Positions 299 through 13,275 of a stretch of 59,788 nt of DNA are shown here, piece by piece; position 1 is the first letter of the stretch; each line of letters opens with the position of its first letter. The stretch spans positions 1 through 59,788 of the forward strand of contig CDMY01000519.1 in assembly GCA_001179505.1 (NCBI GenBank), given 5' to 3'. The DNA is from Vitrella brassicaformis CCMP3155. Lineage: Eukaryota; Protista; Chromerida. Position numbers and translations under genes: made by a program. The notes beneath the pieces are model-generated. The model saw nothing but the letters and a program-made list of their open reading frames with translations, did no database searches and was not told where the DNA came from.

Positions 299-2343
299 TT
301 ATGCGTTGATGAGGGTCACATCATGGTGTGTGTCCGCCGGCTGCCTGTGACCTGACGTCCGCATCCTCGGCTGCTGCTGCTGGTGCTGTGGAGTGGGGGT
401 GTTGGCTGAGACGTGGCCGGTGCTCAACATGTCGTTGATGCCGCAATCCCCCATCTGGCGTTCGTTAACATCCCAACCACACACGTAGCGTGGCGTTCGT
501 GTCAGGCCTGTGTGTATGTATTGTATTGTGTCTTTACTTTGATTTTGAAGTATCCTTTGTCGCCCCAAGTATCGTTCCAGCTGTTGAGCACCAGCCAGTA
601 CTCGACGCCATCCTCCACACCCCACCTACACCCACACACGCACGAACATTCATCCAGGAATCCGACCCTCCCTGTGCCAGTCAGTTCCCTCCCTGTGCTG
701 CCTGCCTGCGTGCGACCTCCCCTCACCCACATACCCGAGTATTTTGATGGCGTGTCCGCCGAGCATCCTGCCTTTGACGTGCTGGTACACACCCGACTTG
801 TAAGTCAGGAAGTCCGAATACACAGAGAACGCACCCGTGATGGGGCCGTTCTGCACACCACACGCCCACATAGACACACAGATAAGTTCGAACCACTTAC
901 TGTGAGTGTGTCTCTGTGACAGACACCTCACCTCCATGATCTCTCGTTTGGCCTCATCGACGTCGAACAGCGTGAAGGCCTCGTACGCCTTGTGCCGGTC
1001 CTGTGCGCACGCACACACACACACGAGAGACCATGAATAGCACGTGCGTCGCGTCCCTGGGGGGGGGCCATGCACCGCACCCACACAGACGGATAGTCCA
1101 TCCACCTCACCCACCTGGTTGAACTGCTCGGTGTAGTTTGTTTCAGAGCATTTGGCCATGCACTTGGGGGTGCTCTGCTCGCCATTGCAGGCCGGGTATG
1201 GGCCTTTGACGTGGTGAGAACACTGAAGGGACGGAGGATACCAGCCAGCCAGCCAACCCACGCCAATTGGATTGGACCCTGTGTGTGTGGTGCGCTTTTG
1301 GTCTGTCTGTCTGTCTGTCTGTGCGAGTGACATCAGATCCCTCCCTCGTACCATTGGAAGTTGGTAGGGCCAGCAGGTGTCCCCCGTTCCGATGTCGCCA
1401 TAGTCACCACCACTCACCACACCCTGCGGTGCAAACACGCCGGCAGGACACGAACGTGGGAAAGAGTGTGGCTCGTGTGTGTCATGGCGACTGACTGACC
1501 ACTTCAGTGAACCACTGCCATGCGAGTGCGGGCTGGCCACCGTCACAGCCGAAAGAAAAACAATGAGACTCGTCGCAGCAGCTCGTCGTGTCCTGCGGGG
1601 ACAGCAGCGTCTGGAACGAACCTGGAACCTCACACACAACACACACACACACACAGAGTGATCAGAGAGAGGGGGTAAAACCTAGATCCTTTCTGTCCTG
1701 TGTGCCCACTTCACTCACCGTTGGTCTTGATGCACATCCGGTCGTTGAAGGCCTCGGTGGACGCAAATGCCCAGCAGCTGCCACACTCGGCCTGGTCTCT
1801 TACGTGCCCAATGACATCCTTGCACTCCGGCCACCTCTCACGGGCGTCAAAGCTCTCAGGCAGCGCATCCCTATCGACCGGCACTGTGGGCTTCTTCTCC
1901 TGAAGGTGGATGTACTGGTCGCCCACAAAGGTGCCCATGAGCCGCCTGGCGTCCTTGACCGACATCTGACGGAACCGAGGGGGGTTCTCCGCCACCCAGG
2001 TGGTGTCGTGCTGGGTGTTGATCTGCCGCGCCATGGCCTCATACGAGGCCGGCCTCGCCTCGCTGAAGGCCGCCTCGCAGATGGCCTGCAGGCTCTCGTC
2101 CGTGAGGAAGTTGTGTTTGCCGGCGCCGATGGTGCTTGGAGGGAGGGCGTCGATGGCGTGTCGTTTGAAGTGCGCAAAGTAGAGGCCGATCTCATCGGGT
2201 GTGAAGGTGCTTGAGAGTTGTGGGGTGAAGAGGCGCCTGAAGCACTCATCGAGCTTGACATCCATCTCCTCTCGGTTGTGCAGGGGCACATCAGCGGCAG
2301 CACCAGCCACAAGGAGGACGACCACAGCCACACGGGACACCAT
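299..2343 (-). CDS. CTSB: Cathepsin B-like cysteine protease (C1A), spliced, with signal peptide and long propeptide
   Basis: [17 protein letters not shown] signal. Motifs [10 protein letters not shown] (catalytic Cys), CSHH occluding loop, GGHAIKILG (His) and [19 protein letters not shown] (Asn). The 3' end is tentative. Confidence 0.93.
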
Positions 2344-2582
2344 CTTTTCCCAAACCAACGTCGGGCCTACAGGGCTTTGCTCGGCGAGAATTTGCGACGT
2401 GAGACAACCCGAATAATTTACGTACTCCTTGACGCCCTTGCGCTGGCCCTTTTCGCACATACGACGTCGCCCACACCATCCTCAACTACATCATGGGCAG
2501 CAACGTCGGAAGCTGGCACAGCTGAAGCTGCTCTTCGATCTAGCGCGGCACAACCCCCTCATAGCCCATCGTCAAGCTGGCA

Positions 2583-5237
2583 ATGGTGAGCCGCCCATCC
2601 ATTGCAGCACCGACATTTCCCCATCCATTTTTGCCTTTCCGGTCAGGCCAAGTGCACAGCAATACGCGGCGACCGTGCAGCAGAGAGCGAAAGAAGACCA
2701 CCTGCAGGGGCCATCCGGGACAACGAGGCCGAGCGCAGAGAACGAGAGATCCTCAACAAGTACACACACGGCTTATGAGTGCACTGTACATGAGGAACGG
2801 CACGCATCTGCTGGTCTTCTTTGTATGTAGGCGGGTCGATGAGCTGGAGACCATGATAGCCACGTACAAAAGAGATCAGCACAAAGTAAACACGCTATTT
2901 GTCTGGGTGAAGGCTGGAAGGCGAGAAAGAAGTGGCGAAGAGGGCAGCAGCCGGCATCGACACCACGCCCACTCAGGACAAGAAGATGATGACGCCCGCC
3001 GAGATGCAGCGATACCTGGACGACTATATTGTCGGTCAACAAGCTGCAAAGCGGGCCGTCATCCTTGCAATCAGTAATTATCACTGATCTGCTTCGTGCT
3101 GCTTGTTGCATTTCAAAAGTGTGTGTGTGTATATGTTCAGGAAACAGGTAGCGCTGGGACCGACAGCAAGACCCCGAAGGCCTCGCAGAGGAGCCCCTGA
3201 TGAACATTCTCCTCAAAGGTCCAACTGGCAGCGGCAAGACAGAGGTGAGGACACTCACCAGTCACATTTTCCATTTGTTGTCGTCTCGTTTTCATTGTCT
3301 GCAGCTCGCTCGACGCCTTGTATCAATGGTGGATGCGCCGTTCATCATCACCCCGATAACCCAGTACACCTCCGTGGGCTATCGGGGTCGAGATGTGGCC
3401 GACATGGTGAACAAGCTGATGCAGAAGACCGTCAACAAAATGAACGCAAATGGCGCACAGGCTCAGGTAAGACAGGAGAACAGCAACACCACTCTTACTC
3501 ATTGTCATCCGTTGTTGGGCCTTGTATTGTCGACTGCAGCTGCCGGAGCCGGGAGATGCACTTGTCAGCCATGGACACACGCAAATATGCTATGAAAATT
3601 GCATGTCTTCTTTCACCATTCGTTTTGCAGCAACTCGCCACCGGCATTGCAGCAGCTCGACATCGGTTTCTCCCACCCTCATCAAGGCGGCCATCAAAGA
3701 AGTCGAGACCAGAGGCATCATCTTCATAGGTATGCATAATTATGCATATGAGAATTATCTTATGCGACTAGATGAGATCGACAAGATTTGTAAGCCTCAG
3801 GTGCGAGAGACATGCAAGAGACATGCGAGAGACATGCGAGAGACTCGTTTGCACACTATGTCTTTCAGAACGAAAGGACGGCCGGGGTGGACGTGTCAAG
3901 AGAAGGTGTACAACGAGATCTCTTGACGGTGATAGAGGGATCAAACGTCGACACCAAATACGGTGAGCAGGTCTCATCATGCGCTCAATGTGCTCTCTCT
4001 TTGTGTGCATGTGTCGTGTGTGAATTCTGTATGCCTAGGGCAAGTGAAGACGAACAGGATGCTGTTCATCGCGGCCGGCGCCTTCCACAACGCGCGCCTC
4101 GAGGACATGTACAAGGAGCTGCGAGCGCGATTCCAGAAAATAGTGGAGATCCGTCTCGTCGTCTGTGACACGGAAGGCAAGACATACCTCGTCAAGTGGG
4201 CGGTGAGTGAGAAAATGGGATATGCAGACAGAAAGGCGGCAGCAGGCAGGCGAAGAGAACGGCGGTTGACCTCGTTGTCGTGTATGTATGTGTAGGGCCA
4301 TCCTCCTGAGGGCTGTCCCGGCACGACTTGGATGCACGAAGAGAATGTTGACCTCACATTGCCTGCGCACCTGTAAGTGAAGGGCCGGCTGTGTGTATCC
4401 ATACATACACATACACATACACACACACACATGTCTGCGTTGGTGTGTTTTGCGCATTCATGTAGGTCGCGGTCTCCCCGCTTATTCGCAGACATGAGGA
4501 ACGAACGTCGTGCAATCGCACGGATGACCAAGGACGACGAAAACGAAAACGGTGCACACACACACGCACGCACTCACTCACGCCAATCTGAGTCATCACG
4601 TGTGTGTGGTGTGGTGTGGTGTGTGTGTGTAGGAAGAGGACGACTCCGGCCACCGCCGTAAGACGGTCGAGACGCAGTGCCTCTTCGCGCGCCTGGGGGC
4701 CATTCTCATCTTGCACCTGAAGCGCTACGGCTTCAACAAGCACACGGGCGCATCCAAGAAGGTACGATGGCTAAAGACACACACAGAGAGGGAACGAGAC
4801 GTTGTTCATTGTGTTGTGGTGGTTGTGCTGTGCTGTGCTGTGCAGTTGAGGCACATGGTGACCTACCCGGAGAAAGTCGTCATCTCCGACAAGTGGCTCA
4901 CCAAGTGAGTGGGATCACGGAGGACACACACACACACACTGGTCTCCATCCATCCGTCGCATCGACTTTTGCATTTATGTCGCCCGTGTCGTGTGTGTGT
5001 GTGTGTGTGTTTGTCTTGTCAAGTCGTTCCTCTCCAAGTACGTGTTGTGTGATGAAGGCAAGGCCAAGCACGGCAGCAGATCCAGCCAGTCAGAGCCGCC
5101 GCCCTTCGGTCGTTGCAAGGTCGGCAGCAAGCGCATCAGGACCTTCAAGTTGCTCGCCGACCGTCGACATCCGCCCCCACATGGCGCCCCGCGCTCTCCT
5201 CAACGAGCAGCCCTCGGCGTCCTCCTCATCCTTCTGA
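2583..5237 (+). pseudogene. Chimeric HslU(ClpY) AAA+ / chromo-like / partial USP gene; contains an in-frame TAG and out-of-phase distal exons
   Basis: HslU exons: [97 protein letters not shown]. Then YLVKWAGHPPEGCPGTTWMHEENV, then ILILHLKRYGFNKHTGASKK|LRHMVTYPEKVVISDKW. Start and end are tentative. Confidence 0.7.
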
Positions 5238-6602
5238 GTGGATTCCGCTCTCTTGCTGTCTGTCTAGCTGCCTGTCTGTCTGTCTGTCTGTCTGTCGCCT
5301 CTTCGTGTGTGTGTGTGTGTGTGTGCGTGTGTGAGTGGCTGTTTGCGTGCGTGGGGGGCAGGGGAGAGGGGGGCATGGGGGCATGGAGTGCAGAGAGAGA
5401 GGGTGCAGGTGACATGGGACACGACGATTTTTCCTGTGTAGTGTGGGACACAGGACAAGGGGAGGGAGGAAGAAGATCGACAGAAACGCTGTCTACATTT
5501 TATATCGTCGAAGGACAGGGACCATACGCTTTCTCGCGCTCGCCATGTGTGTGTGTGTGAGGGTGCGCATCGCTGGCTGCTTATTTATATACATCGAGGG
5601 AATGGACACCTTGACAGGCGCACATCAACAGAGTTTGCTCGTCTGTCTGATGATGTATGCATTGCATGGGGTTGTCGGCACGGGGACGGTCGACTGCATT
5701 GGAACTTGAGGCAACAAGACCGTCACACACACACACACGCAGATGCAGTCAGTGAGTCAGTGTGTTGATTTGAGCACGTATCGACAACCAGACAACCGCG
5801 GGCAGACAGCCACTCCTCACCCACTCAGACAGACAGACAGACAGACTGGTAGGCAGGCAGGCAGACACGCCATTGCACACGTACACACAACTAGGGAGGG
5901 AGGGAGGGAGGGAGGTGGGGGAGAGGCAAAACTCTCTCGTCAATATGTCTGCCTGCCTGCCTGCCAGGACACATCGATATCCATCCATCCGTCTATTCAT
6001 GCCCAGCCGCCGGTCACACACATGAAAGACAGCAGGTGCTTGCTAGCTGGTTGACCGGAGGGAGGGAGGGAGGGAGAGCGAGCGAGAGAGAGGAAGGCAC
6101 TAGACGAGAGGAGGGAGACCTACCTGTAAAACGGGAGCTAGCCTCACCTTCTGACTGAGTCTGTTGGTTGCCCTTCCACCAAACCCAGCGAGTCACTCAG
6201 AAGGCACAAATAGCTTGTTTGTTTGTGACGTGAAGCAACCAATCCATGCAATCAATGCACACCAACATGACCAGCCCCACTCACTCACTCCACAGCCAAC
6301 GCCTTCCTGCCTTCCTTGGCGTCTCTCTCTGTCTTGGCACTCGGCTGACTAAAACGCACGCACAACTACCGCACCGCACCGCACCTCGATCGTCTTCACT
6401 CCGTGTGCATTGATTGCATGGGCCGTGTGCGTCGAGTGCTGCCCTTGCCCACACGACACGTGGCTGAACGCACTCACTCTGGGCTCAGGCACGGATGAGC
6501 TGCGGCAGCAATCGCACACGCGGCACGCACAACTACCCCATGAACCGATTCATTCGTTCATTCCCCCTCATATATGCGGCAGTGTGCTATCTATCCATCG
6601 CG

Positions 6603-9600
6603 TCAGCCAGCTCCTGCAGGAGGGTGCCTGGGCGGCTTGTCGGGCAGGTAGCTGATGTCGATGTTGCGGTCCACGTACACCAACATGGACGCGTTGTAGG
6701 CCTCCAACACCTAGGCATACAGAGGGGGAGGGGGGACCACAGACATGGCCATGGATGCGCTCACTCATCCATGCAGCCACCCAGCCACCCACCCTGTATT
6801 TGTCGACAGACTTGACCACACTGTCGTCGAACAGATACCTGCACACACCACGCACCGCGCAGACACAGACAGACAGATATGAGGGCATCCGGATATATTC
6901 ATTCATTCATTCGTCTTGTTGTGTGTGTGGTGTGCGTGTGGTTGTGCATGGAAACAAGCATCCGTCCATACCATTCCTTGTCGTTTCTGACGTATGCGTT
7001 GTAGTGTCCGTGGCTGAGGGTGGTGCCGTGGTGCTTTATCACTGCCGTCAGCTCGTACTCCGGACGATACACACCCTCGCCAACCCTGCACACCACACGG
7101 TGGACCCACATCCACATCCACATCCACAGTCACAGTCACAGTCACAGACAGACGATGGATGGGATGGATGGATAGACACCCGCCTGCCTGTCTGTCTGTC
7201 TGTCTCAATGCATCCCCCCATTGTTGTGTTGTGTGTGTGTACCAGTCTTCCTCGATGACGAGCTTCTCCGGGAAATCGACCTCCGTTGACGACTGCACTC
7301 ATACACACACACACAAGGAGGGAGGGCAGGGCGTGACGGTTGGACCGGTGTTTCCTTCCTTCGGTTTGTTGGCTGGGCTGACCTTGGACGATTGGTTGGT
7401 GGCCTTGTCATACTCGTAACGCAGAAACGTCACCAGCAACACCTGCACGTCACGTGACGCACCGCACCCAGCCATGCCATCCACAACACATACAACCAAC
7501 ACAACGTGTGTTATGTGTGTCCGTGCATTGCCTCCGTGTGCTGTTGTTGTGGTTCACAGTGGTGTGTGTACTGACGGGTGGTAGGTATGCGAAGGTGGTG
7601 TGTCGTGTGAATCCGCCCGCCTTGGCGGGCGACTCGGGTGGCGGCTCCTCCGCACTGCTCGACGCTGTGGGCTTGCTGTCCACCTCCTCGCGGAGACACT
7701 CACGGGCGATGCCCTCACTACAGACACACAGACAGATTTACACGGGGAGTGGACGGACAAATGGACACGACACGCGCAGTGCGGTCAGTCAGTCAGTCAG
7801 TGAGTCAATGAGATGAGGCTGTGTGTGCTGTCTGTGTGTACATGAGGTTGAATCGTTTGCCGTCTTTGGGTGTGTCGATGTGGATGTGCAGCTTCCACAT
7901 GAACTCGATATGCACACTCCCGTGGTCATCGTCATCTGCAGCCAAACCAGGCCACACACAGAGGGGGGGGCATTTATCCATCCGTCGTTCATTCGAGGGT
8001 AGCTGAGTGAGTGAGGGCGTGTGTGTGTACCTTCCTTGACGGCCTGCTTCGTCACGTCTGCCCTCTGAACAATGCCGAACAGACTGACCAAAGAGGCACA
8101 GCACCCAAGAGTGTTTCATGCCATGCGCCATGTGTTTGCTGTGTAGACACACACCACACCACAAGTGCCCCCCTCCCACCGCTTGATAGGCGAATCCTCA
8201 TTCTCAATGTCCCTGACGTATGCACACACACACACACACACAGACAAGATCACACGCGTGTGTGTGAAGGTCGATCCTCCCCCGCGAGTGCGTGTGTGTG
8301 CGGCCATGGAGGCAGTTAGCTTACTGGACGACGAGTCCCTTCTTGTCAGGGGCCGTCGGCTGCGTGTGGGGGACGGCGGCAGGGCTGTCACCCAAAGTCT
8401 CCCTCTGATAGACATTTAGAGAGAGCATCCATTCAATGCATTGGACGCACACAAGAACCGATTTGGTGTCGGATTGGATATCCCGCGGGCGGTCGGTGGC
8501 TCAACTCAACACCACACGGGTGCGTGCTGTGGTGTGCTGTGTTTGCCTTGCCTTTTTCCATCTGCACTCCTCGTGCAGCGAGTTGAGCAGGAAGATCGTG
8601 AACTCGTGCACATCCTGCTGGCTGTCTGCACACACATCACATCACATCACATGCACACACACAGAGGAGAAAGAGGTAGAAACAGTACAGGAATGTCTGT
8701 CAGACTTGTAGCTGGCTGCACTGACTGACTGACTGATTGCATCTGATCTGCCGTCCCTCCATCCCTCCCTCCCCCGGTCCGGTAGGTAGGTGGGTACCGT
8801 ACCCATTTCATTAGAGTGCTTCTGTGCGTATTCCTTCCATGCCAGTAGGACAGGCCCGAGATATGCCGTGGCTGAGATAGTGCCCCTCCCCTGGCCCTTG
8901 CCGCCCTTGCCACCCTTCCCCACAGGTTGGAAACCATCCGCTGTGGCTGGGTCGGCTGACACACACACACACACACACACAGAGAGAGAGAAAGAGAGAA
9001 TAAATACACACATTGATCCATCTGTGGCTGCGTGTCGTGTCGTGTCGTGTGGTGTGGTGTGGTGTGGTGTGCCTTACAGCGGCTTTGCTGACTGACCTGT
9101 GCCCTGTTGTTCCTCCCAAGCCTTGTCTATTTCTTCCTTGAGTGCGGGGTGCTCAGCGAGCACATCCCGTGGGTGGTAGAACTGCCGGAACAGACCCGCC
9201 AGGCACCGATAAAAGGTGCGACGACCGGGGCCAACCTCCTGCACACACACACACACACATGATGGAAGGACACAGTCGAGGACAGGCACCTGCCTGGCTG
9301 CCCATGACAGGACTGACATACACAACTCACGTACCTCGTTAGAGAGTGAGAGGAGCATGGCCAGTGGCGAGATGGGCAGAAGCGACTGCACCACCTGGGG
9401 GCACACATCACATGCACAGACAGATAGACAGACCAGCGAGACCCAACCAAACCAGAAGGTGCCGTCGTATGGTTGTGCTGTGGTGCATTTGGTGTGGTGT
9501 GGTGTGCAGGTGACTGACTGACCGAGTTGACGTAGCAGAAGTTCTTGCTGTTCTTGAGGCCACGGCGGGTGTAGCGCGGCATCGACGTACACTGCCAACA

Positions 9601-12600
9601 TCCCATCCACCCAGCCATCACTCAGATATGCATGCATCACATCGGAATGGATGGACCCGACCCACTCGCTGTGTGGCTGTCTGTCTGGCTGTCTGTCTGT
9701 CTGGCTTTCCTTGCAAACTTACGCTGGTGAAGGAGAAGAGTCGTTTGAAGCTCTCCGACCCCTCCGGGCACTGTGTCTCCATGTGCTTCTCAGCCTGCAT
9801 CCAACATCACACCCACACCAAGGCCCATACACTCACATGTGTGTGTGTTCCTGGTTGCGGCATCCAGCCAGCCAGCCAGCCAGCCAGCCATACCTCGAGG
9901 AGCCTGGCGCGCTCAATGAGCGGCCGTCTCCTGAGCTCGGCCAGCAGGTGCTGACGCCGGGGATGCGTGGCGATGTCCCGCACCAGCAGGAAGTCCAGCA
10001 CGCTCAGGCCGAGGCTGGATATGGTCACCCTCAGGTGGCACATGACGTAGGCCTTGAAGTAGTCCTCCGAGAGGCTGGCGGTGAGGGCGCTCAGGGTGTC
10101 CTGGCTGGGCACCTCCGAGGGGCCGCCACGCACCTTGTCGGCGAATGACATGCCTGGTTTACCGCCCCACGCAGGCCCGCCGCCGCTCCGCAGCGAGCTG
10201 CTCGGCGACGCACCACCGCCACCACCTCCCGCACTCAAGGCGGGCGAGGGCGCGGCAGCGGCACCACCACCACCACCACCCCCACCCCCACCCGCCGCAT
10301 CCGCAGCTGTCCATGCTGTGTACTGTTGCTCGGGCTCCTCGTCTTGGTCGGTGTCGACTTGGTCTGGCGCTGGTGGTTCTTGTTGCGCGTTGAAGGTGTG
10401 GTCAGCATCATCGGCCGGCGGGGGGAGGGGTTGGGGGGGTGTTGGCTGGTCTGATGGAGGGGGGAATGGGGGTGCGTCCTGGGCCTCGCCATCCTCCTCT
10501 TGGGGCTCTGCAGCAGATGCGTCCACGACCGTCCGCTGCTCCTCGTCACCTCCTGCTGCTGCTGCCGCTCCTGCCGTGGAATCATCCTCCGCCAGGGGTA
10601 GCTCCTCTTGGCCACTCGCCTCTGCGGCTTGGCCGTCTGGTGCCACCTCATGGCCCACCATGCTGCCCTCCATGATGGACAAGGGTGGGGGTGCACGTGT
10701 CTGGCCAGGTGGCATCATGAATGGCGGCGATGGGAGTGTGTCAGGTGGCTGGCTGCTGAGGTTGGCAGCTCGGTGTCTGCTGCTACCCCCGCTGGATGAC
10801 GAGCCTGACTGGTCCAGGTCCACGTATATGCCCCCGTTGGTGTGAATGATACCCCCATGGCCACGGTCCTGCTCGTAGTGGGGCTGCCGGCTGGGCGTCG
10901 AGGGGTGGTCACCATCGCCACCGCCATCTACTGCACCACTCTCGCCCTCCTGACAGACAGACAGACAGACAGACATCAAGGACGACAGACAGACATGGAT
11001 GGACACAGACAGACATGACCATGAATGCGCTCACTGCACTGATGGTGTCAAGCTTGTCTATGCGGCCGGCAAGCCGGCCGTGCGTCCCCCTCTCACCTAC
11101 CTCGGCCTCATCCATGCCTTCGTGCGGCGGCACTTGCAGGCTGACCGGCACCGGACTCACATGTGCAGCTCCCCCCTCCCCATCGGCCGGATTGGGAGGG
11201 GGTGGGTGTGGAAGTGGTGGGCCCTGACTCACACTTACGTGGGGGGGAGACATATGGACGTATGGCGCATGCGGCTGCTGATGCATGGCGCCCATGACCA
11301 CATTCTGCAGACCATACGGCGGTACGTCTGCACCAACACCAGCGCCGCCACCAAAGCCGTTGGTCGGATACTGCACGCCACCATCACCATCACCACCACC
11401 AGGAGCAGGTGCAGCAGCAGGTGGTTGGACCTGCAGAGGCACCGGCATTGGGCTGGTGACCTGGCCATGTAACTGCTGGACGGGTCCCCCTGCCCCGCCG
11501 TCGAAGGGCATGCCCATGGTGCTGAGAGGTGGAGGTGGGGGGTAGGTAGTGGGGTATGAGACAGGGTGGTGGGTCCCACCCACTGGCACGGCCCCTGGGT
11601 GGGGAAGGGGGTGGTGAGGGTGTTGAGGGGCAAGGTGGGGATGGGGGAGGGGGGGNNNNNNNNNNNNNNNNNNNNNNNNNNNNNNNNNNNNNNNNNNNNN
11701 NNNNNNNNNNNNNNNNNNNNNNNNNNNNNNNNNNNNNNNNNNNNNNNNNNNNNNNNNNNNNNNNNNNNNNNNNNNNNNNNNNNNNNNNNNNNNNNNNNNN
11801 NNNNNNNNNNNNNNNNNNNNNNNNNNNNNNNNNNNNNNNNNNNNNNNNNNNNNNNNNNNNNNNNNNNNNNNNNNNNNNNNNNNNNNNNNNNNNNNNNNNN
11901 NNNNNNNNNNNNNNNNNNNNNNNNNNNNNNNNNNNNNNNNNNNNNNNNNNNNNNNACGGTGGAGAGGGGTGGGGGTGGATCGGGGACGGAGGGGGGAACC
12001 CGTAGTCCATCGGGTGGGGCTGACCCAATTGGAATCCTGACGCGTCACCCGGGGGTGGTGCAACGGCCTCTGGTGGCATGTCACAACTTGCCTGCGGGCA
12101 GAAGGAAGGAAAACACACCAACCAAGACCAAGAGCAGAGCACATGTCAGTCAGTGAGGGAGGCTCCATGGCATGCATGGCTTGATTGATCCTTGGAAGGG
12201 GGGTGCGGTGGGGTGCGGTGGTGGGTACCTGAGCGGCTGCAGCGGAGCTGTCAAGGGGAATGGTGGTCATCATCGGTCCTTCAGCCACTCCCAAGTGGCA
12301 CCCACTGCTGATCTCACTGCTTGGCAGCCCGTCCGACACCCTCTGGCTGGCTGCCGCCACCTCAGCGTATTCCACGTCACGGTGCGAGTGACCATGACCC
12401 AGTGCATCTTCACCGTGTACTTGAGCTGACGACTCCTGACGCCCACGGCCCCGCCCCGCCTCGTCGGTGGGTGGGCCTGGGCCACCGGCTGGCTGGTGGT
12501 CTGCTGGCGGTGGCGATGGGTGGTGTGGTGTGCGGTGGTGATGTTGTTGAGGTTGAGGCGGCATCCCCTCTTGTGGCGAGACATCGACGCCATTGAGGAG

Positions 12601-13275
12601 GGCAGCACGGGGAGGGCCATCAGAGTCACCCGATGCCGACGGCGCAGACGCAGACACGCCGTCCGGCTGCTGAACTGGACCGACTTCAGACGCTGTCGGC
12701 TCACGGTCACGATAGGCGTCGCTCTCAGCCACAGATGCCCCCATCGGTGAGACGCTCTCCACCCCATTGTGGCCCCACCCGCTCGTCAGGATGGCTCCCT
12801 CGCCCTCGTGGTCACGGCCGCGGTCTTCAGTACTCCTGCCGGCACTCGATGACGCGTCATCTGTATGTGAGGCCCGTCGGCGGAGGGCCGGCTTCCATGG
12901 CTGCTTGGGGGCCGGCTGCGGAGGCTTCTTCGAGTGCGTTCGGTTCATAGCGTGAGTTAGCACAGAGTCAGATGACGACGGGGCGGCGGGTGCAGGGGCC
13001 GCTGATGCCGCTACGGATGGTGCCGATACTGGTGCGGCCGGTGGTGGGGCCCCTCCCGTGGCGGCCTTGGTCATTCCCTTGGTCCACACGCTGCCTCGTG
13101 GCTGGCTGGATGAGGGCTGCCTGCCGCCGCCGCCCAGACTGGGAAAGTGGTCAGGACTCAACTCGGGCGACTGATCCTCCCCTTGCTGCTGCCGCTGCTG
13201 TGGCTGTGGCTGTGGCTGTTGCTGTTGCTGTTGATCGGTGTCTGCCGGTTCATCTCGAGAGCTGCTGCCGTTCAT
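6603..13275 (-). CDS. Ubiquitin-specific protease (C19), USP10/Ubp3-like, with long Gln/Pro/Ala-rich N-terminus; spans an assembly gap
   Basis: Cys box RGLKNSKNFCYVNSV (~9525-9570), QQDVHEFTIFLLNSLHEE (~8570-8620), VDFPEKLVI, His box YELTAVIKHHGTTLSHGHYNAYVR, YLFDDSVV, final exon NASMLVYV...GAG*. Confidence 0.85.
11656..11955. other. Assembly gap (300 N) after a G-run
   Basis: N run seen directly. Confidence 1.

What the first reader, a model, noticed from the sequence alone, without database searches (positions are those of the whole stretch)
2977..4372. HslU ATPase core fused directly to a chromo-like domain, without HslV-docking parts
Seen: phase-consistent exons encode the HslU Walker A, GYRG pore loop, Walker B and ELRARF. 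The long I-domain is reduced to a short unrelated linker. Within the same exon (4039-4202) the sequence switches to [21 protein letters not shown]|GHPPEGCPGTTWMHEENV, which fits the chromodomain pattern YLVKW.G...TWE.EEN. HslU's C-terminal domain, which activates HslV, is absent. USP-like exons follow. Inference: an exon-shuffled unfoldase with a chromatin-reader-like domain and a USP fragment, either a new nuclear remodeller or a decaying chimera.
Basis: partly seen in the sequence, partly recalled or inferred. Interest (0 to 1): 0.75.

Follow-up and report, generated by a model that had tools for sequence, protein, structure and literature searches.

The report
Chimeric HslU-like gene with premature stop
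In the alga Vitrella brassicaformis this is a patchwork gene: the front of an old HslU-type ATPase copy joined to copied pieces of two other genes (a chromo-like piece and the tail of a ubiquitin protease). It is transcribed weakly and carries a stop codon in a conserved position, so it is more likely a recently broken chimera than a new chromatin remodeller.

Summary
The HslU motifs, the missing I-domain and C-terminal domain, and the chromo-like motif are all in the sequence. The exons are not fully phase-consistent. An in-frame TAG (3149-3151) replaces the conserved Trp codon of the HslU 'RNRW' motif. In the RNA-supported exon set the USP-like exons are out of frame (TAA at 4659-4661).

The locus is a mosaic:
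- 2986-4142 is an old, I-domain-less HslU paralogue with no DNA-level copy elsewhere in the genome.
- 4145-4629 is 70-74% identical, introns included, to a module in two other genes (C356, C408).
- 4602-5333 copies the 3' end of real USP genes (C47, C821), with the His box deleted.

One spliced, low-abundance RNA links all three parts. A 94%-identical metagenome relative shares the HslU-chromo junction. HslU exons E6-E7 show dN/dS of about 0.07 against it, so the fusion was under selection until recently. The relative lacks the USP part.

No chromodomain hit was obtained exon by exon, only collinear motif-level similarity. The gene model is already public (399 aa, unnamed), but the RNA contigs contradict it.

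Verdict: a lineage-specific exon-shuffled chimera, probably freshly inactivated. Interest is modest.

The parts
2986..3073 (+). E1: HslU N-terminal helix (MMTPAEMQRYLDDYIVGQQAAKRAVILAI), donor GT at 3074
   Evidence: 61% identical over 28 aa to paralogue C446. RNA contig piece 2913-3073 ends exactly at this donor.
3141..3244 (+). E2: RNR*RWDRQQ..., the ATG at 3200, and Walker A GPTGSGKTE
   Evidence: TIGR00390 hit 28-121 with 1 TAG. The 102 letters between the two RNA pieces fit the acceptor at 3141.
3149..3151 (+). In-frame TAG replacing the Trp codon of the conserved RNRW motif
   Evidence: Aligns codon for codon, without gaps, with TGG in C130, C206, C446 and C444, and with TAC in C267. DNA contigs from two studies show no difference from the window over this place.
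3305..3466 (+). E3: LARRL...APFII...GYRG pore loop
   Evidence: 42-49% identical to C446/C206 exons. RNA piece 3303-3463.
3540..3729 (+). E4: about 45 aa of unrelated linker in place of the I-domain, then ...IKAAIKEVETRGIIFI (start of Walker B). The acceptor actually used is uncertain: 3540 keeps the frame, the canonical AG at 3629-30 breaks it.
   Evidence: Frame analysis. Depth arithmetic on the RNA contigs argues against 3540 for the observed contig. The junction was not read directly.
3772..3800 (+). E5: [10 protein letters not shown] (Walker B)
   Evidence: 89% identical to C130 EIDKICKPR.
3869..3962 (+). E6: [31 protein letters not shown]
   Evidence: TIGR00390 262-294. 5 synonymous and 0 non-synonymous differences from relative L016.
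4039..4202 (+). E7: HslU sensor-1/Arg-finger region up to about 4142, then the first chromo-like exon part ([20 protein letters not shown]). The fusion point lies inside this exon.
   Evidence: TIGR00390 265-333. Homology to C356/C408 begins at 4145. RNA piece 4038-4201.
4145..4629 (+). Segment copied from a C356/C408-type gene: chromo-like exons plus their introns plus E9
   Evidence: 70% nt identity to C356:398711-399187 and 74% to C408:11058-11203. The genome holds only 3 copies of the first exon.
4296..4372 (+). E8: GHPPE + GCPGTTWMHEENVDLTLPAHL (second chromo-like half). The ancestral acceptor of the module is at 4310|4311.
   Evidence: Alignment A1. RNA length and depth fit the 77-nt form.
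4466..4551 (+). E9: SRSPRLFADMRNERRAIARMTKDDENEN, ends in phase 1
   Evidence: 54% identical to the C356 exon. Counted within the 352 RNA letters.
4602..5333 (+). Segment copied from the 3' part of a USP gene (C47/C821 type). It starts in the GT-rich intron before E10 and has an internal deletion of the His-box exons.
   Evidence: 76%/74% nt identity, 95-98% at the 3' end; 90% to a fragment on C242.
4633..4761 (+). E10: USP-like ...LILHLKRYGFNKHTGASKK. With the RNA-supported acceptor at 4633 the HslU/chromo frame reads GRGRLRPPP and stops at TAA 4659-4661.
   Evidence: 81% aa identity to C47/C821. Phase count; 352-letter count.
4846..4904 (+). E11: LRHMVTYPEKVVISDKWLT (USP-like)
   Evidence: 68-79% aa identity to C47/C821.
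5024..5237 (+). E12: remnant of the USP 3' exons. The acceptor is shifted by 1 nt (cagG to caaG), there is a roughly 110-nt unalignable filler where the His-box exons lie in the parent genes, and the conserved C-terminal ...TVDIRPHMAPRALLNEQPSASSSSF is followed by a stop.
   Evidence: Alignment A2. The RNA piece starts at 5024.

Best explanation
The locus is a lineage-specific mosaic gene of Vitrella brassicaformis, made by ectopic DNA recombination from three sources.

1. The 5' two-thirds come from an old, already I-domain-less paralogue of the HslU (ClpY) AAA+ ATPase. This covers the Walker A, pore-loop, Walker B, sensor-1 and Arg-finger exons and has no small C-terminal domain.
2. A 485-bp piece of a C356/C408-type gene carries a two-exon chromo-like module and one further exon. 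It is fused in frame inside an HslU exon.
3. About 730 bp come from the 3' end of a C47/C821-type USP gene. The join lies in a GT-rich intron tract, and the segment later lost its His-box exons.

The whole is transcribed at a low level and spliced into one RNA. In strain CCMP3155 the conserved Trp codon of 'RNRW' is a TAG, and the USP-like exons lie behind a stop codon in the RNA-supported frame. They also lack both catalytic boxes.

The HslU-derived frame, with at least the first chromo-like exon attached, was under purifying selection until recently. The most likely present state is therefore a freshly inactivated chimeric gene. At best it is N-terminally truncated, starting at the ATG at 3200. 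It is neither an HslV partner nor a working unfoldase.

What is shown and what is inferred:
- Shown: the anatomy, the source genes, the nonsense codon, the RNA linkage and the selection signal.
- Inferred: the recombination mechanism, the timing, and loss of function.
For: - Genome and gene identity: 72.7 Mb in 1064 contigs. The public model P0001 is named as from Vitrella brassicaformis CCMP3155.
- HslU origin: TIGR00390 beats ClpX but stays far below the cut-off. Intron positions are shared with paralogues C130, C267 and C446.
- Mosaic origin: DNA-level matches, introns included, to C356/C408 for 4145-4629 and to C47/C821/C242 for 4602-5333. 2500-4150 has no DNA-level copy apart from a 92-bp upstream repeat.
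- Source genes: C47 carries a real UCH domain, 26.8 bits.
- Nonsense codon: TAG aligns with TGG in four paralogues. DNA contigs X3 (2566-4389) and X4 (2841-3347), from two studies, show no difference.
- RNA: X5 contig 17 joins 2913-3073, 102 nt and 3303-3463. Contig 18 joins 4038-4201, 352 nt and 5024-5189. The 352 equals E8+E9+E10+E11+1. Depth is 7-9, against 1218 for the neighbouring cathepsin B gene.
- Frame break: E9 ends in phase 1 and E10 starts at 4633, which gives TAA at 4659-4661.
- USP decay: shifted acceptor and His-box deletion.
- Relative L016 is 94% identical and shares the junction, but lacks 4344-5459 and has AC at the E8 acceptor.
- No protein with this architecture exists elsewhere. 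After P0001 (903 bits) the next hits are ordinary bacterial HslU at 155 bits or less. Only P0001 and P0002 match the junction exon closely among 1.84 billion representatives.
Against: - Exons E6-E8 show 8 synonymous against 2 non-synonymous differences from the relative (dN/dS 0.07, p 2e-4), and indels occur only in introns. The reading frame has therefore been functional for most of the time since the two lineages split, and the product may still be made from the ATG at 3200.
- The HslU-to-chromo fusion is in frame and shared by both lineages.
- The RNA evidence comes from assembled contigs of one run, not raw reads. The E3/E4 junction could not be read directly, and minor isoforms would be missed.
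- The relative's E2 is not available, so the age of the TAG is unknown.
Confidence: 0.6

Rival explanations
1. A working, truncated fusion protein. Translation starts at the ATG at 3200 (MNILLKGPTGSGKTE...) and runs through the AAA+ core into the chromo-like module, ending at TAA 4659-4661 (about 290 aa if the 3540 acceptor is used). It acts as a lineage-specific nucleotide-binding or chromatin- or protein-binding factor, independent of HslV.
For: - dN/dS is 0.07 on E6-E7, there are no exon indels, and the chromo-like exons are nearly unchanged between two lineages: 1 change in 108 nt, against about 6.7% in introns.
- The fusion is in frame and shared with the relative.
- Walker A, Walker B, sensor-1 and the Arg-finger position are kept.
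- I-domain-less HslU-like paralogues (C130, C267) show that this stripped form is old in this genome.
- The gene is transcribed and spliced.
Against: - The ATG at 3200 lies downstream of a long upstream reading frame that ends at the TAG, so initiation would be inefficient.
- The N-terminal helix, which contacts the adenine in HslU (established knowledge), would be lost.
- There is no AAA+ small domain and no sensor-2 arginine.
- The depth figures argue against the in-frame 3540 acceptor in the observed RNA contig.
- RNA abundance is low, and introns lie downstream of the stop codon, which favours nonsense-mediated decay.
- There is no chromodomain profile hit.
Confidence: 0.25
2. The public gene model is right. 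It gives a 399-aa AAA-USP protein by splicing 3030|3152 (skipping the TAG), retaining 3730-3771, and joining E7 directly to E10, so that the USP-like exons are in frame.
For: The model is open and gives Pfam AAA_2 (77 bits) and a marginal UCH hit (25.2 bits against a cut-off of 23.9). It is deposited as a protein of Vitrella brassicaformis CCMP3155.
Against: - The RNA contig runs on to 3073, not 3030.
- 352 letters, not 188, lie between 4201 and 5024.
- The depth in 4261-4457 fits a 77-nt E8.
- The GTCGGT donor at 3031 is weak.
- The USP part has neither a Cys box nor a His box.
Confidence: 0.07
3. Assembly artefact: the juxtaposition of HslU, chromo-like and USP pieces is a mis-join of repeats.
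For: The junction between the chromo-like and USP segments lies in low-complexity GT-rich sequence. Contigs of all runs break at such tracts.
Against: - DNA contigs of an independent study span 2566-4389 without a difference.
- A spliced RNA contig bridges 4038-5189.
- An independent metagenome contig carries the same HslU-chromo junction.
Confidence: 0.03

Closest known systems
HslU (ClpY) AAA+ unfoldase of the HslUV protease (NCBIfam TIGR00390; Pfam AAA_2 PF07724)
   Same: N-terminal helix, Walker A, pore-1 loop position, Walker [12 protein letters not shown], sensor-1 and Arg-finger region. HslU is the best-scoring family, and intron positions are shared with the other HslU-like genes of the genome.
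   Different: No I-domain. No C-terminal small domain, sensor-2 Arg or HslV-activating tail. Pore loop is GYRG rather than GYVG. Scores 166 bits against a cut-off of 362. Has a nonsense codon in RNRW. Foreign 3' parts are attached.
I-domain-less HslU-like paralogues of the same genome (C130:171.3-172.2 kb; C267:70.0-71.3 kb)
   Same: GPTGSGKTE-type Walker [18 protein letters not shown](Q/R), [11 protein letters not shown], and no room for an I-domain between the Walker A and Walker B exons.
   Different: C267 keeps the C-terminal domain. In C130 no equivalent of E7 was found after the E6 equivalent, and it has RPTGSGKT. Neither carries the chromo-like or USP segments.
Chromodomain (Pfam PF00385), e.g. 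the chromovirus-type chromodomains abundant in this genome
   Same: Collinear YLVKW ... TW..EEN(V/L) motif. Each exon half aligns to the expected part of a profile built from 12 Vitrella chromodomains.
   Different: Only about 5 bits per half. No Pfam or PDB hit exon by exon. The first aromatic-cage position is supplied by HslU-derived sequence (K/I), and the third is His. The sister copies in C356/C408 have LVNKEG in place of TW..EEN.
USP/UCH deubiquitinases (PF00443): the paralogous genes on C47 and C821
   Same: Exons E10-E12 are 68-81% aa and 74-76% nt identical to the LILHLKRY...YPEK...C-terminal part of those genes.
   Different: No Cys-box exons. His-box exons deleted. Acceptor shifted by 1 nt. 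Out of frame in the RNA-supported transcript.
Chimeric genes and pseudogenes formed by segmental duplication and exon shuffling (e.g. Drosophila jingwei-type young chimeric genes; gene-fragment mosaics)
   Same: Fragments of several source genes in one orientation, introns included, transcribed as one spliced RNA. The source genes are still present elsewhere.
   Different: No transposon hallmark was looked for or seen. One junction lies in a GT-rich intron tract and the other inside an exon, at the module's ancestral acceptor.

Membership tests
HslU (TIGR00390) | Whole-protein score above the curated equivalog cut-off (362 bits) | tested here: not met
   166.3 bits on the public model P0001. 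Exon hits cover only model positions 28-121 and 262-333.
HslU (TIGR00390) | Walker A GPTGxGKT and Walker B hhhhDE | tested here: met
   GPTGSGKTE in E2 and IIFI|DEIDKI in E4/E5.
HslU (TIGR00390) | I-domain inserted between Walker A and Walker B | tested here: not met
   Model positions 122-261 are unmatched. About 45 aa of unrelated sequence take their place.
HslU (TIGR00390) | C-terminal small domain with sensor-2 Arg and the HslV-activating C-terminal tail | tested here: not met
   No match beyond model position 333. Paralogues C206, C444 and C267 do match positions 360-414.
HslU (TIGR00390) | Open reading frame through the conserved N-terminal RNRW motif | tested here: not met
   TAG in place of TGG, present in DNA contigs of two studies.
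Chromodomain (PF00385) | Profile match at or above the gathering score (25.1 bits) | tested here: inconclusive
Exon by exon there is no hit, and the module is not among the exon-level genome hits. A local profile gives about 5 bits for each half, in collinear order, with shuffles reaching the score in 23/2000 and 2/2000.
Chromodomain (PF00385) | Three-residue aromatic cage (β1 Tyr/Phe, Trp of KW, Tyr/Phe after the Gly) | tested here: not met
   Read from the sequence against the alignment of 12 Vitrella chromodomains. Only the Trp is present; the other two positions are K/I and His.
Chromodomain (PF00385) | Three-stranded β-sheet packed against a C-terminal helix (fold) | not testable with these tools
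   This needs a fold prediction of the spliced E7-E8-E9 product, and no stored reference holds it.
USP/UCH (PF00443) | Catalytic Cys box and His box | tested here: not met
   Homology to the source genes starts after the Cys-box exons, at 4602. The His-box exons are deleted between 5042 and 5155.
USP/UCH (PF00443) | In-frame continuity with the rest of the gene | tested here: not met
   With the RNA-supported exons the frame stops at TAA 4659-4661. A 1-nt acceptor shift lies at 5023/5024.

The most novel reading that the evidence does not exclude
Vitrella (and perhaps other chromerids) holds a small family of HslU-derived AAA+ modules that have lost the I-domain and been redeployed away from HslV. 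In one member the AAA+ small domain was replaced by a chromo-like β-module. That fusion was kept under purifying selection in at least two lineages, which would make it a new type of AAA+ protein with a reader-like appendage. The CCMP3155 allele would then be either a strain-specific null or translated from the internal ATG.
Probability: 0.2. Interest if true: 0.6.

Novelty: new member of a known kind. Interest (0 to 1): 0.33.

Why it matters
- It is a clean, traceable case of exon shuffling in a chromerid alga. All three source lineages are still in the genome, one junction sits in the GT-rich 3' tract typical of this organism's introns, and a close relative shows a different structural state.
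- It shows that the public gene model for this locus is forced around a stop codon and is not supported by RNA.
- It tempers the idea of a new chromatin remodeller. The ATPase lacks parts that AAA+ unfoldases need, and the gene carries a nonsense mutation.
- If the selection signal holds up in more isolates, the I-domain-less HslU-like family would deserve a functional look.

Tried and rejected
- Exon-by-exon Pfam scans at E up to 10 gave only weak AAA_2 hits and no Chromo hit.
- PDB sequence searches with each chromo-like half gave only chance hits: a lectin and EGFR.
- The word search with the read-through ORFs 3200-3592 and 3963-4292 aimed to find upstream contigs of the relative or a spliced Logan product. 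It found none.
- An exact look-up of P0001 found nothing on record.
- I first thought the C356 source gene carried PHD and DNA-methyltransferase-like parts, and that C408 carried a kinase-like part. Pfam found nothing on the open segments tried, so I withdraw both labels.
- A local inverted duplication of the neighbouring minus-strand USP gene (6568-13275) as the source of the USP fragment is rejected. Similarity is only 53% over 15 aa, and the real sources are on C47/C821.
- A reassigned TAG codon is rejected. The one other TAG reported inside an HslU match (C444) lies in intron read-through.
- A recent duplicate of a canonical HslU is rejected. Exons are only 42-65% aa identical, and there is no DNA-level copy.
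- The E3/E4 acceptor could not be read from the read-laying output. The depth arithmetic argues against 3540 but does not fit the canonical 3631 exactly, so this is left open.
- Literature: no paper holds both 'Vitrella' and 'HslU'. Three papers hold both 'Vitrella brassicaformis' and 'chromodomain'; from their titles and abstracts none concerns this locus.
Full report
**What the window is**

The assembly has 72.7 Mb in 1064 contigs and the window is contig C519. The DNA is intron-rich, with about 56% G+C.

**Checking the observation**

Reading the + strand with GT-AG introns gives these exons (my coordinates):
- E1 2986-3073
- E2 3141-3244
- E3 3305-3466
- E4 3540 or 3631 to 3729
- E5 3772-3800
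- E6 3869-3962
- E7 4039-4202
- E8 4296-4372
- E9 4466-4551
- E10 4633-4761
- E11 4846-4904
- E12 5024-5237

The hslU model TIGR00390 matches the window at model positions 28-121 and 262-333 only. On the public model P0001 it scores 166 bits, above ClpX at 93 bits but far below the 362-bit cut-off.

- There is an in-frame TAG at 3149-3151. The search program also flagged it ('1 TAG').
- HslU homology continues to about 4142. ELRARFQKI aligns with ELQGRLPVRV of paralogue C446.

**The stop codon is a nonsense mutation**

A codon-by-codon comparison of E2 with the five other HslU-like genes of the genome needs no gaps. It puts the TAG on the TGG (Trp) of the conserved RNRW motif in C130, C206, C446 and C444, and on TAC in C267. 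The intron just upstream is at the same position in C130, C267 and C446.

DNA contigs from two separate studies cover the site without any difference from the window: X3 over 2566-4389 and X4 over 2841-3347.

**RNA**

Run X5 behaves as RNA. It has spliced contigs, and depths range from 7 to over 1200.
- Contig 17 lies on 2913-3073 and 3303-3463 with 102 letters between. This fits E1's donor at 3073 and E2 from 3141, so the TAG is in the RNA.
- Contig 18 lies on 4038-4201 and 5024-5189 with 352 letters between. This equals one ambiguous base plus E8 (77), E9 (86), E10 from 4633 (129) and E11 (59).
- The depth in bin 4261-4457 corresponds to 78 nt, which fits the 77-nt E8.

One spliced RNA therefore links the HslU, chromo-like and USP-like exons, at depth 7-9 against 1218 for the neighbouring cathepsin B gene.

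E9 ends in phase 1. With E10 starting at 4633, the HslU/chromo frame reads on for nine codons and stops at TAA 4659-4661. The USP-like exons are untranslated in this RNA, and two further introns lie behind the stop.

The E3/E4 junction could not be read directly. The depth figures argue against the in-frame acceptor at 3540 for contig 17, but they do not fit the canonical AG at 3629-30 exactly. I leave this open.

**The public model**

P0001 (399 aa, unnamed) avoids the TAG with a 3030|3152 splice, retains 3730-3771, and joins E7 directly to E10. The RNA contigs contradict the first and third of these choices. Its Pfam hits are AAA_2 (77 bits) and a marginal UCH hit (25.2 bits), with no Chromo hit.

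**Mosaic origin**

A DNA search of the whole genome gives three different results for the three parts.
- **2500-4150:** there is no other copy, apart from a 92-bp repeat upstream.
- **4145-4629:** this is 70% identical to C356:398711-399187 and 74% identical to C408:11058-11203, introns included. A protein-level search finds only these three copies of the first module exon.
- **4602-5333:** this is 76% and 74% identical, and 95-98% identical at the 3' end, to the 3' parts of genes on C47 and C821. It is 90% identical to a 118-bp fragment on C242.

C47 and C821 are USP genes of one type. Both keep the His-box exons, and C47 also shows a Cys box (GLVNNANLCYSN...) and a UCH hit of 26.8 bits. The window's copy differs from them in three ways:
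- It begins in the GT-rich intron before E10.
- Its acceptor is shifted by one base at 5023/5024; the RNA piece starts at 5024.
- About 110 nt of unalignable sequence replace the His-box exons.

The chromo-like segment begins within two bases of the module's ancestral acceptor, but in the window it is fused without an intron to HslU coding sequence. Ectopic recombination at such tracts is my inference.

In C408 the module's second exon is homologous for only about 36 nt and then continues into different coding sequence. The module has therefore been recombined more than once.

**Is it a chromodomain?**

- Exon by exon, neither Pfam nor the PDB sequences give a chromodomain hit.
- The genome-wide exon-level PF00385 scan lists 50 matches, none at C519, C356 or C408.
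- I built a local profile from 12 chromodomains of this genome. It aligns the first half to the ...YklKW part and the second half to the AtWedEenl part, in the right order. Each scores about 5 bits, and shuffles reach these scores in 23/2000 and 2/2000 trials.
- Only the Trp of the aromatic cage is kept. The sister copies read LVNKEG where the window reads TWMHEEN.

The resemblance is more than composition would give, but it is motif-level only, and the region was picked because of that motif.

**Selection and a relative**

The big representative search with the junction exon found only P0001 and one 96%-identical ORF, P0002. P0002 lies on a 3.7-kb ENA metagenome contig, L016.

L016 matches window 3806-4343 at 94% and 5460-5556 at 93%. 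It lacks 4344-5459, has AC in place of the AG before E8, and continues into sequence that in this genome lies on C821.

Over E6, E7 and the first 48 nt of E8 there are 8 synonymous and 2 non-synonymous differences. This gives dS 0.12, dN 0.009 and dN/dS 0.07 (Fisher p 2e-4). All indels lie in introns.

From this I conclude three things:
- The fusion predates the split of the two lineages.
- The HslU-derived frame has been under purifying selection.
- The USP part, and the end of the chromo-like module, are dispensable.

**Family context**

The genome holds canonical-looking HslU genes on C446, C206 and C444, and an HslV-like gene on C984.

C267 and C130 are I-domain-less HslU-like genes. C130 shares EIDKICKP(R/Q), [11 protein letters not shown] and APFII..TQYT with the window, but it has RPTGSGKT and no equivalent of E7 was found after its E6 equivalent. 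C267 keeps the C-terminal domain.

The window's exons are 42-65% identical to all of these. It is an old paralogue, and the I-domain loss is old too. No protein elsewhere in the 5.8-billion-sequence collection shares the architecture.

**Conclusion**

The interpretation 'exon-shuffled chimera' is right and now has identified source genes.

The tri-domain protein does not exist in the RNA-supported form. The USP part is a dead fragment. The ATPase lacks the parts needed for HslV docking and for normal AAA+ ring function.

The strain carries a nonsense mutation in a conserved codon. Because the frame was under selection until recently, I take the locus to be a freshly inactivated, or at best N-terminally truncated, lineage-specific chimeric gene (confidence 0.6). 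A still-functional AAA-core-plus-chromo-like protein starting at the ATG at 3200 is the main rival (0.25).

Noticed in passing
window 1711-2460 (- strand) and upstream exons: Cathepsin B-like cysteine protease gene (CGSCWAFAS... motif). It is by far the most abundant transcript in the stretch (depth 1218 in X5). Both RNA-like runs read C where the genome and the DNA runs read A at 2302.
   Followed up: no
window 6568-13275 (- strand): A separate, apparently complete USP gene, with a Cys box near 9500 and a His box at 6900-7100, converging on the chimeric gene. It holds an assembly gap (run of N) around 11.6-12.0 kb. It is not the source of the USP fragment.
   Followed up: partly
window 2504-2595: A 92-bp element with 89-90% identical copies at C282:51861-51953 and C309:60507-60599. 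It lies upstream of the HslU-like exons; its nature is unknown.
   Followed up: no
L016 (ENA ERZ893784 k147_3378768), 3698 bp: Metagenome contig from a close relative (94% nt). After the HslU-chromo exons it continues into sequence 87% identical to C821:18476-21211. This is either a different gene order in the relative or a chimeric assembly.
   Followed up: partly
L041 (G000:C130:167500-176500), about 3800-4700 +: I-domain-less HslU-like gene with RPTGSGKT in place of GPTGSGKT and no detectable equivalent of E7.
   Followed up: partly
L040 (G000:C267:66500-75500), about 3550-4830 +: HslU-like gene without an I-domain but with the C-terminal domain (ENSTINIGTRRL...). Its pore-loop region is altered.
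   Followed up: partly
L012 (G000:C408:7000-15000), about 4210-3700 -: The same chromo-like first exon (EVRLVLCEREGNTYVVKWA), followed by a second exon that is homologous for only about 36 nt and then runs into unrelated coding sequence. This is a second independent recombination of the module.
   Followed up: partly
L015 (G000:C242:140500-148500), 3929-4049 +: A 118-bp fragment of the USP exon, 90% identical to window 4601-4718 and closer than the full USP genes are. It is cut off after ...LILHL.
   Followed up: no
window 5826-5965: Very high contig depth and dozens of alternative joints in all four runs: a dispersed short repeat or microsatellite-rich element (ctgt/gtct runs).
   Followed up: no
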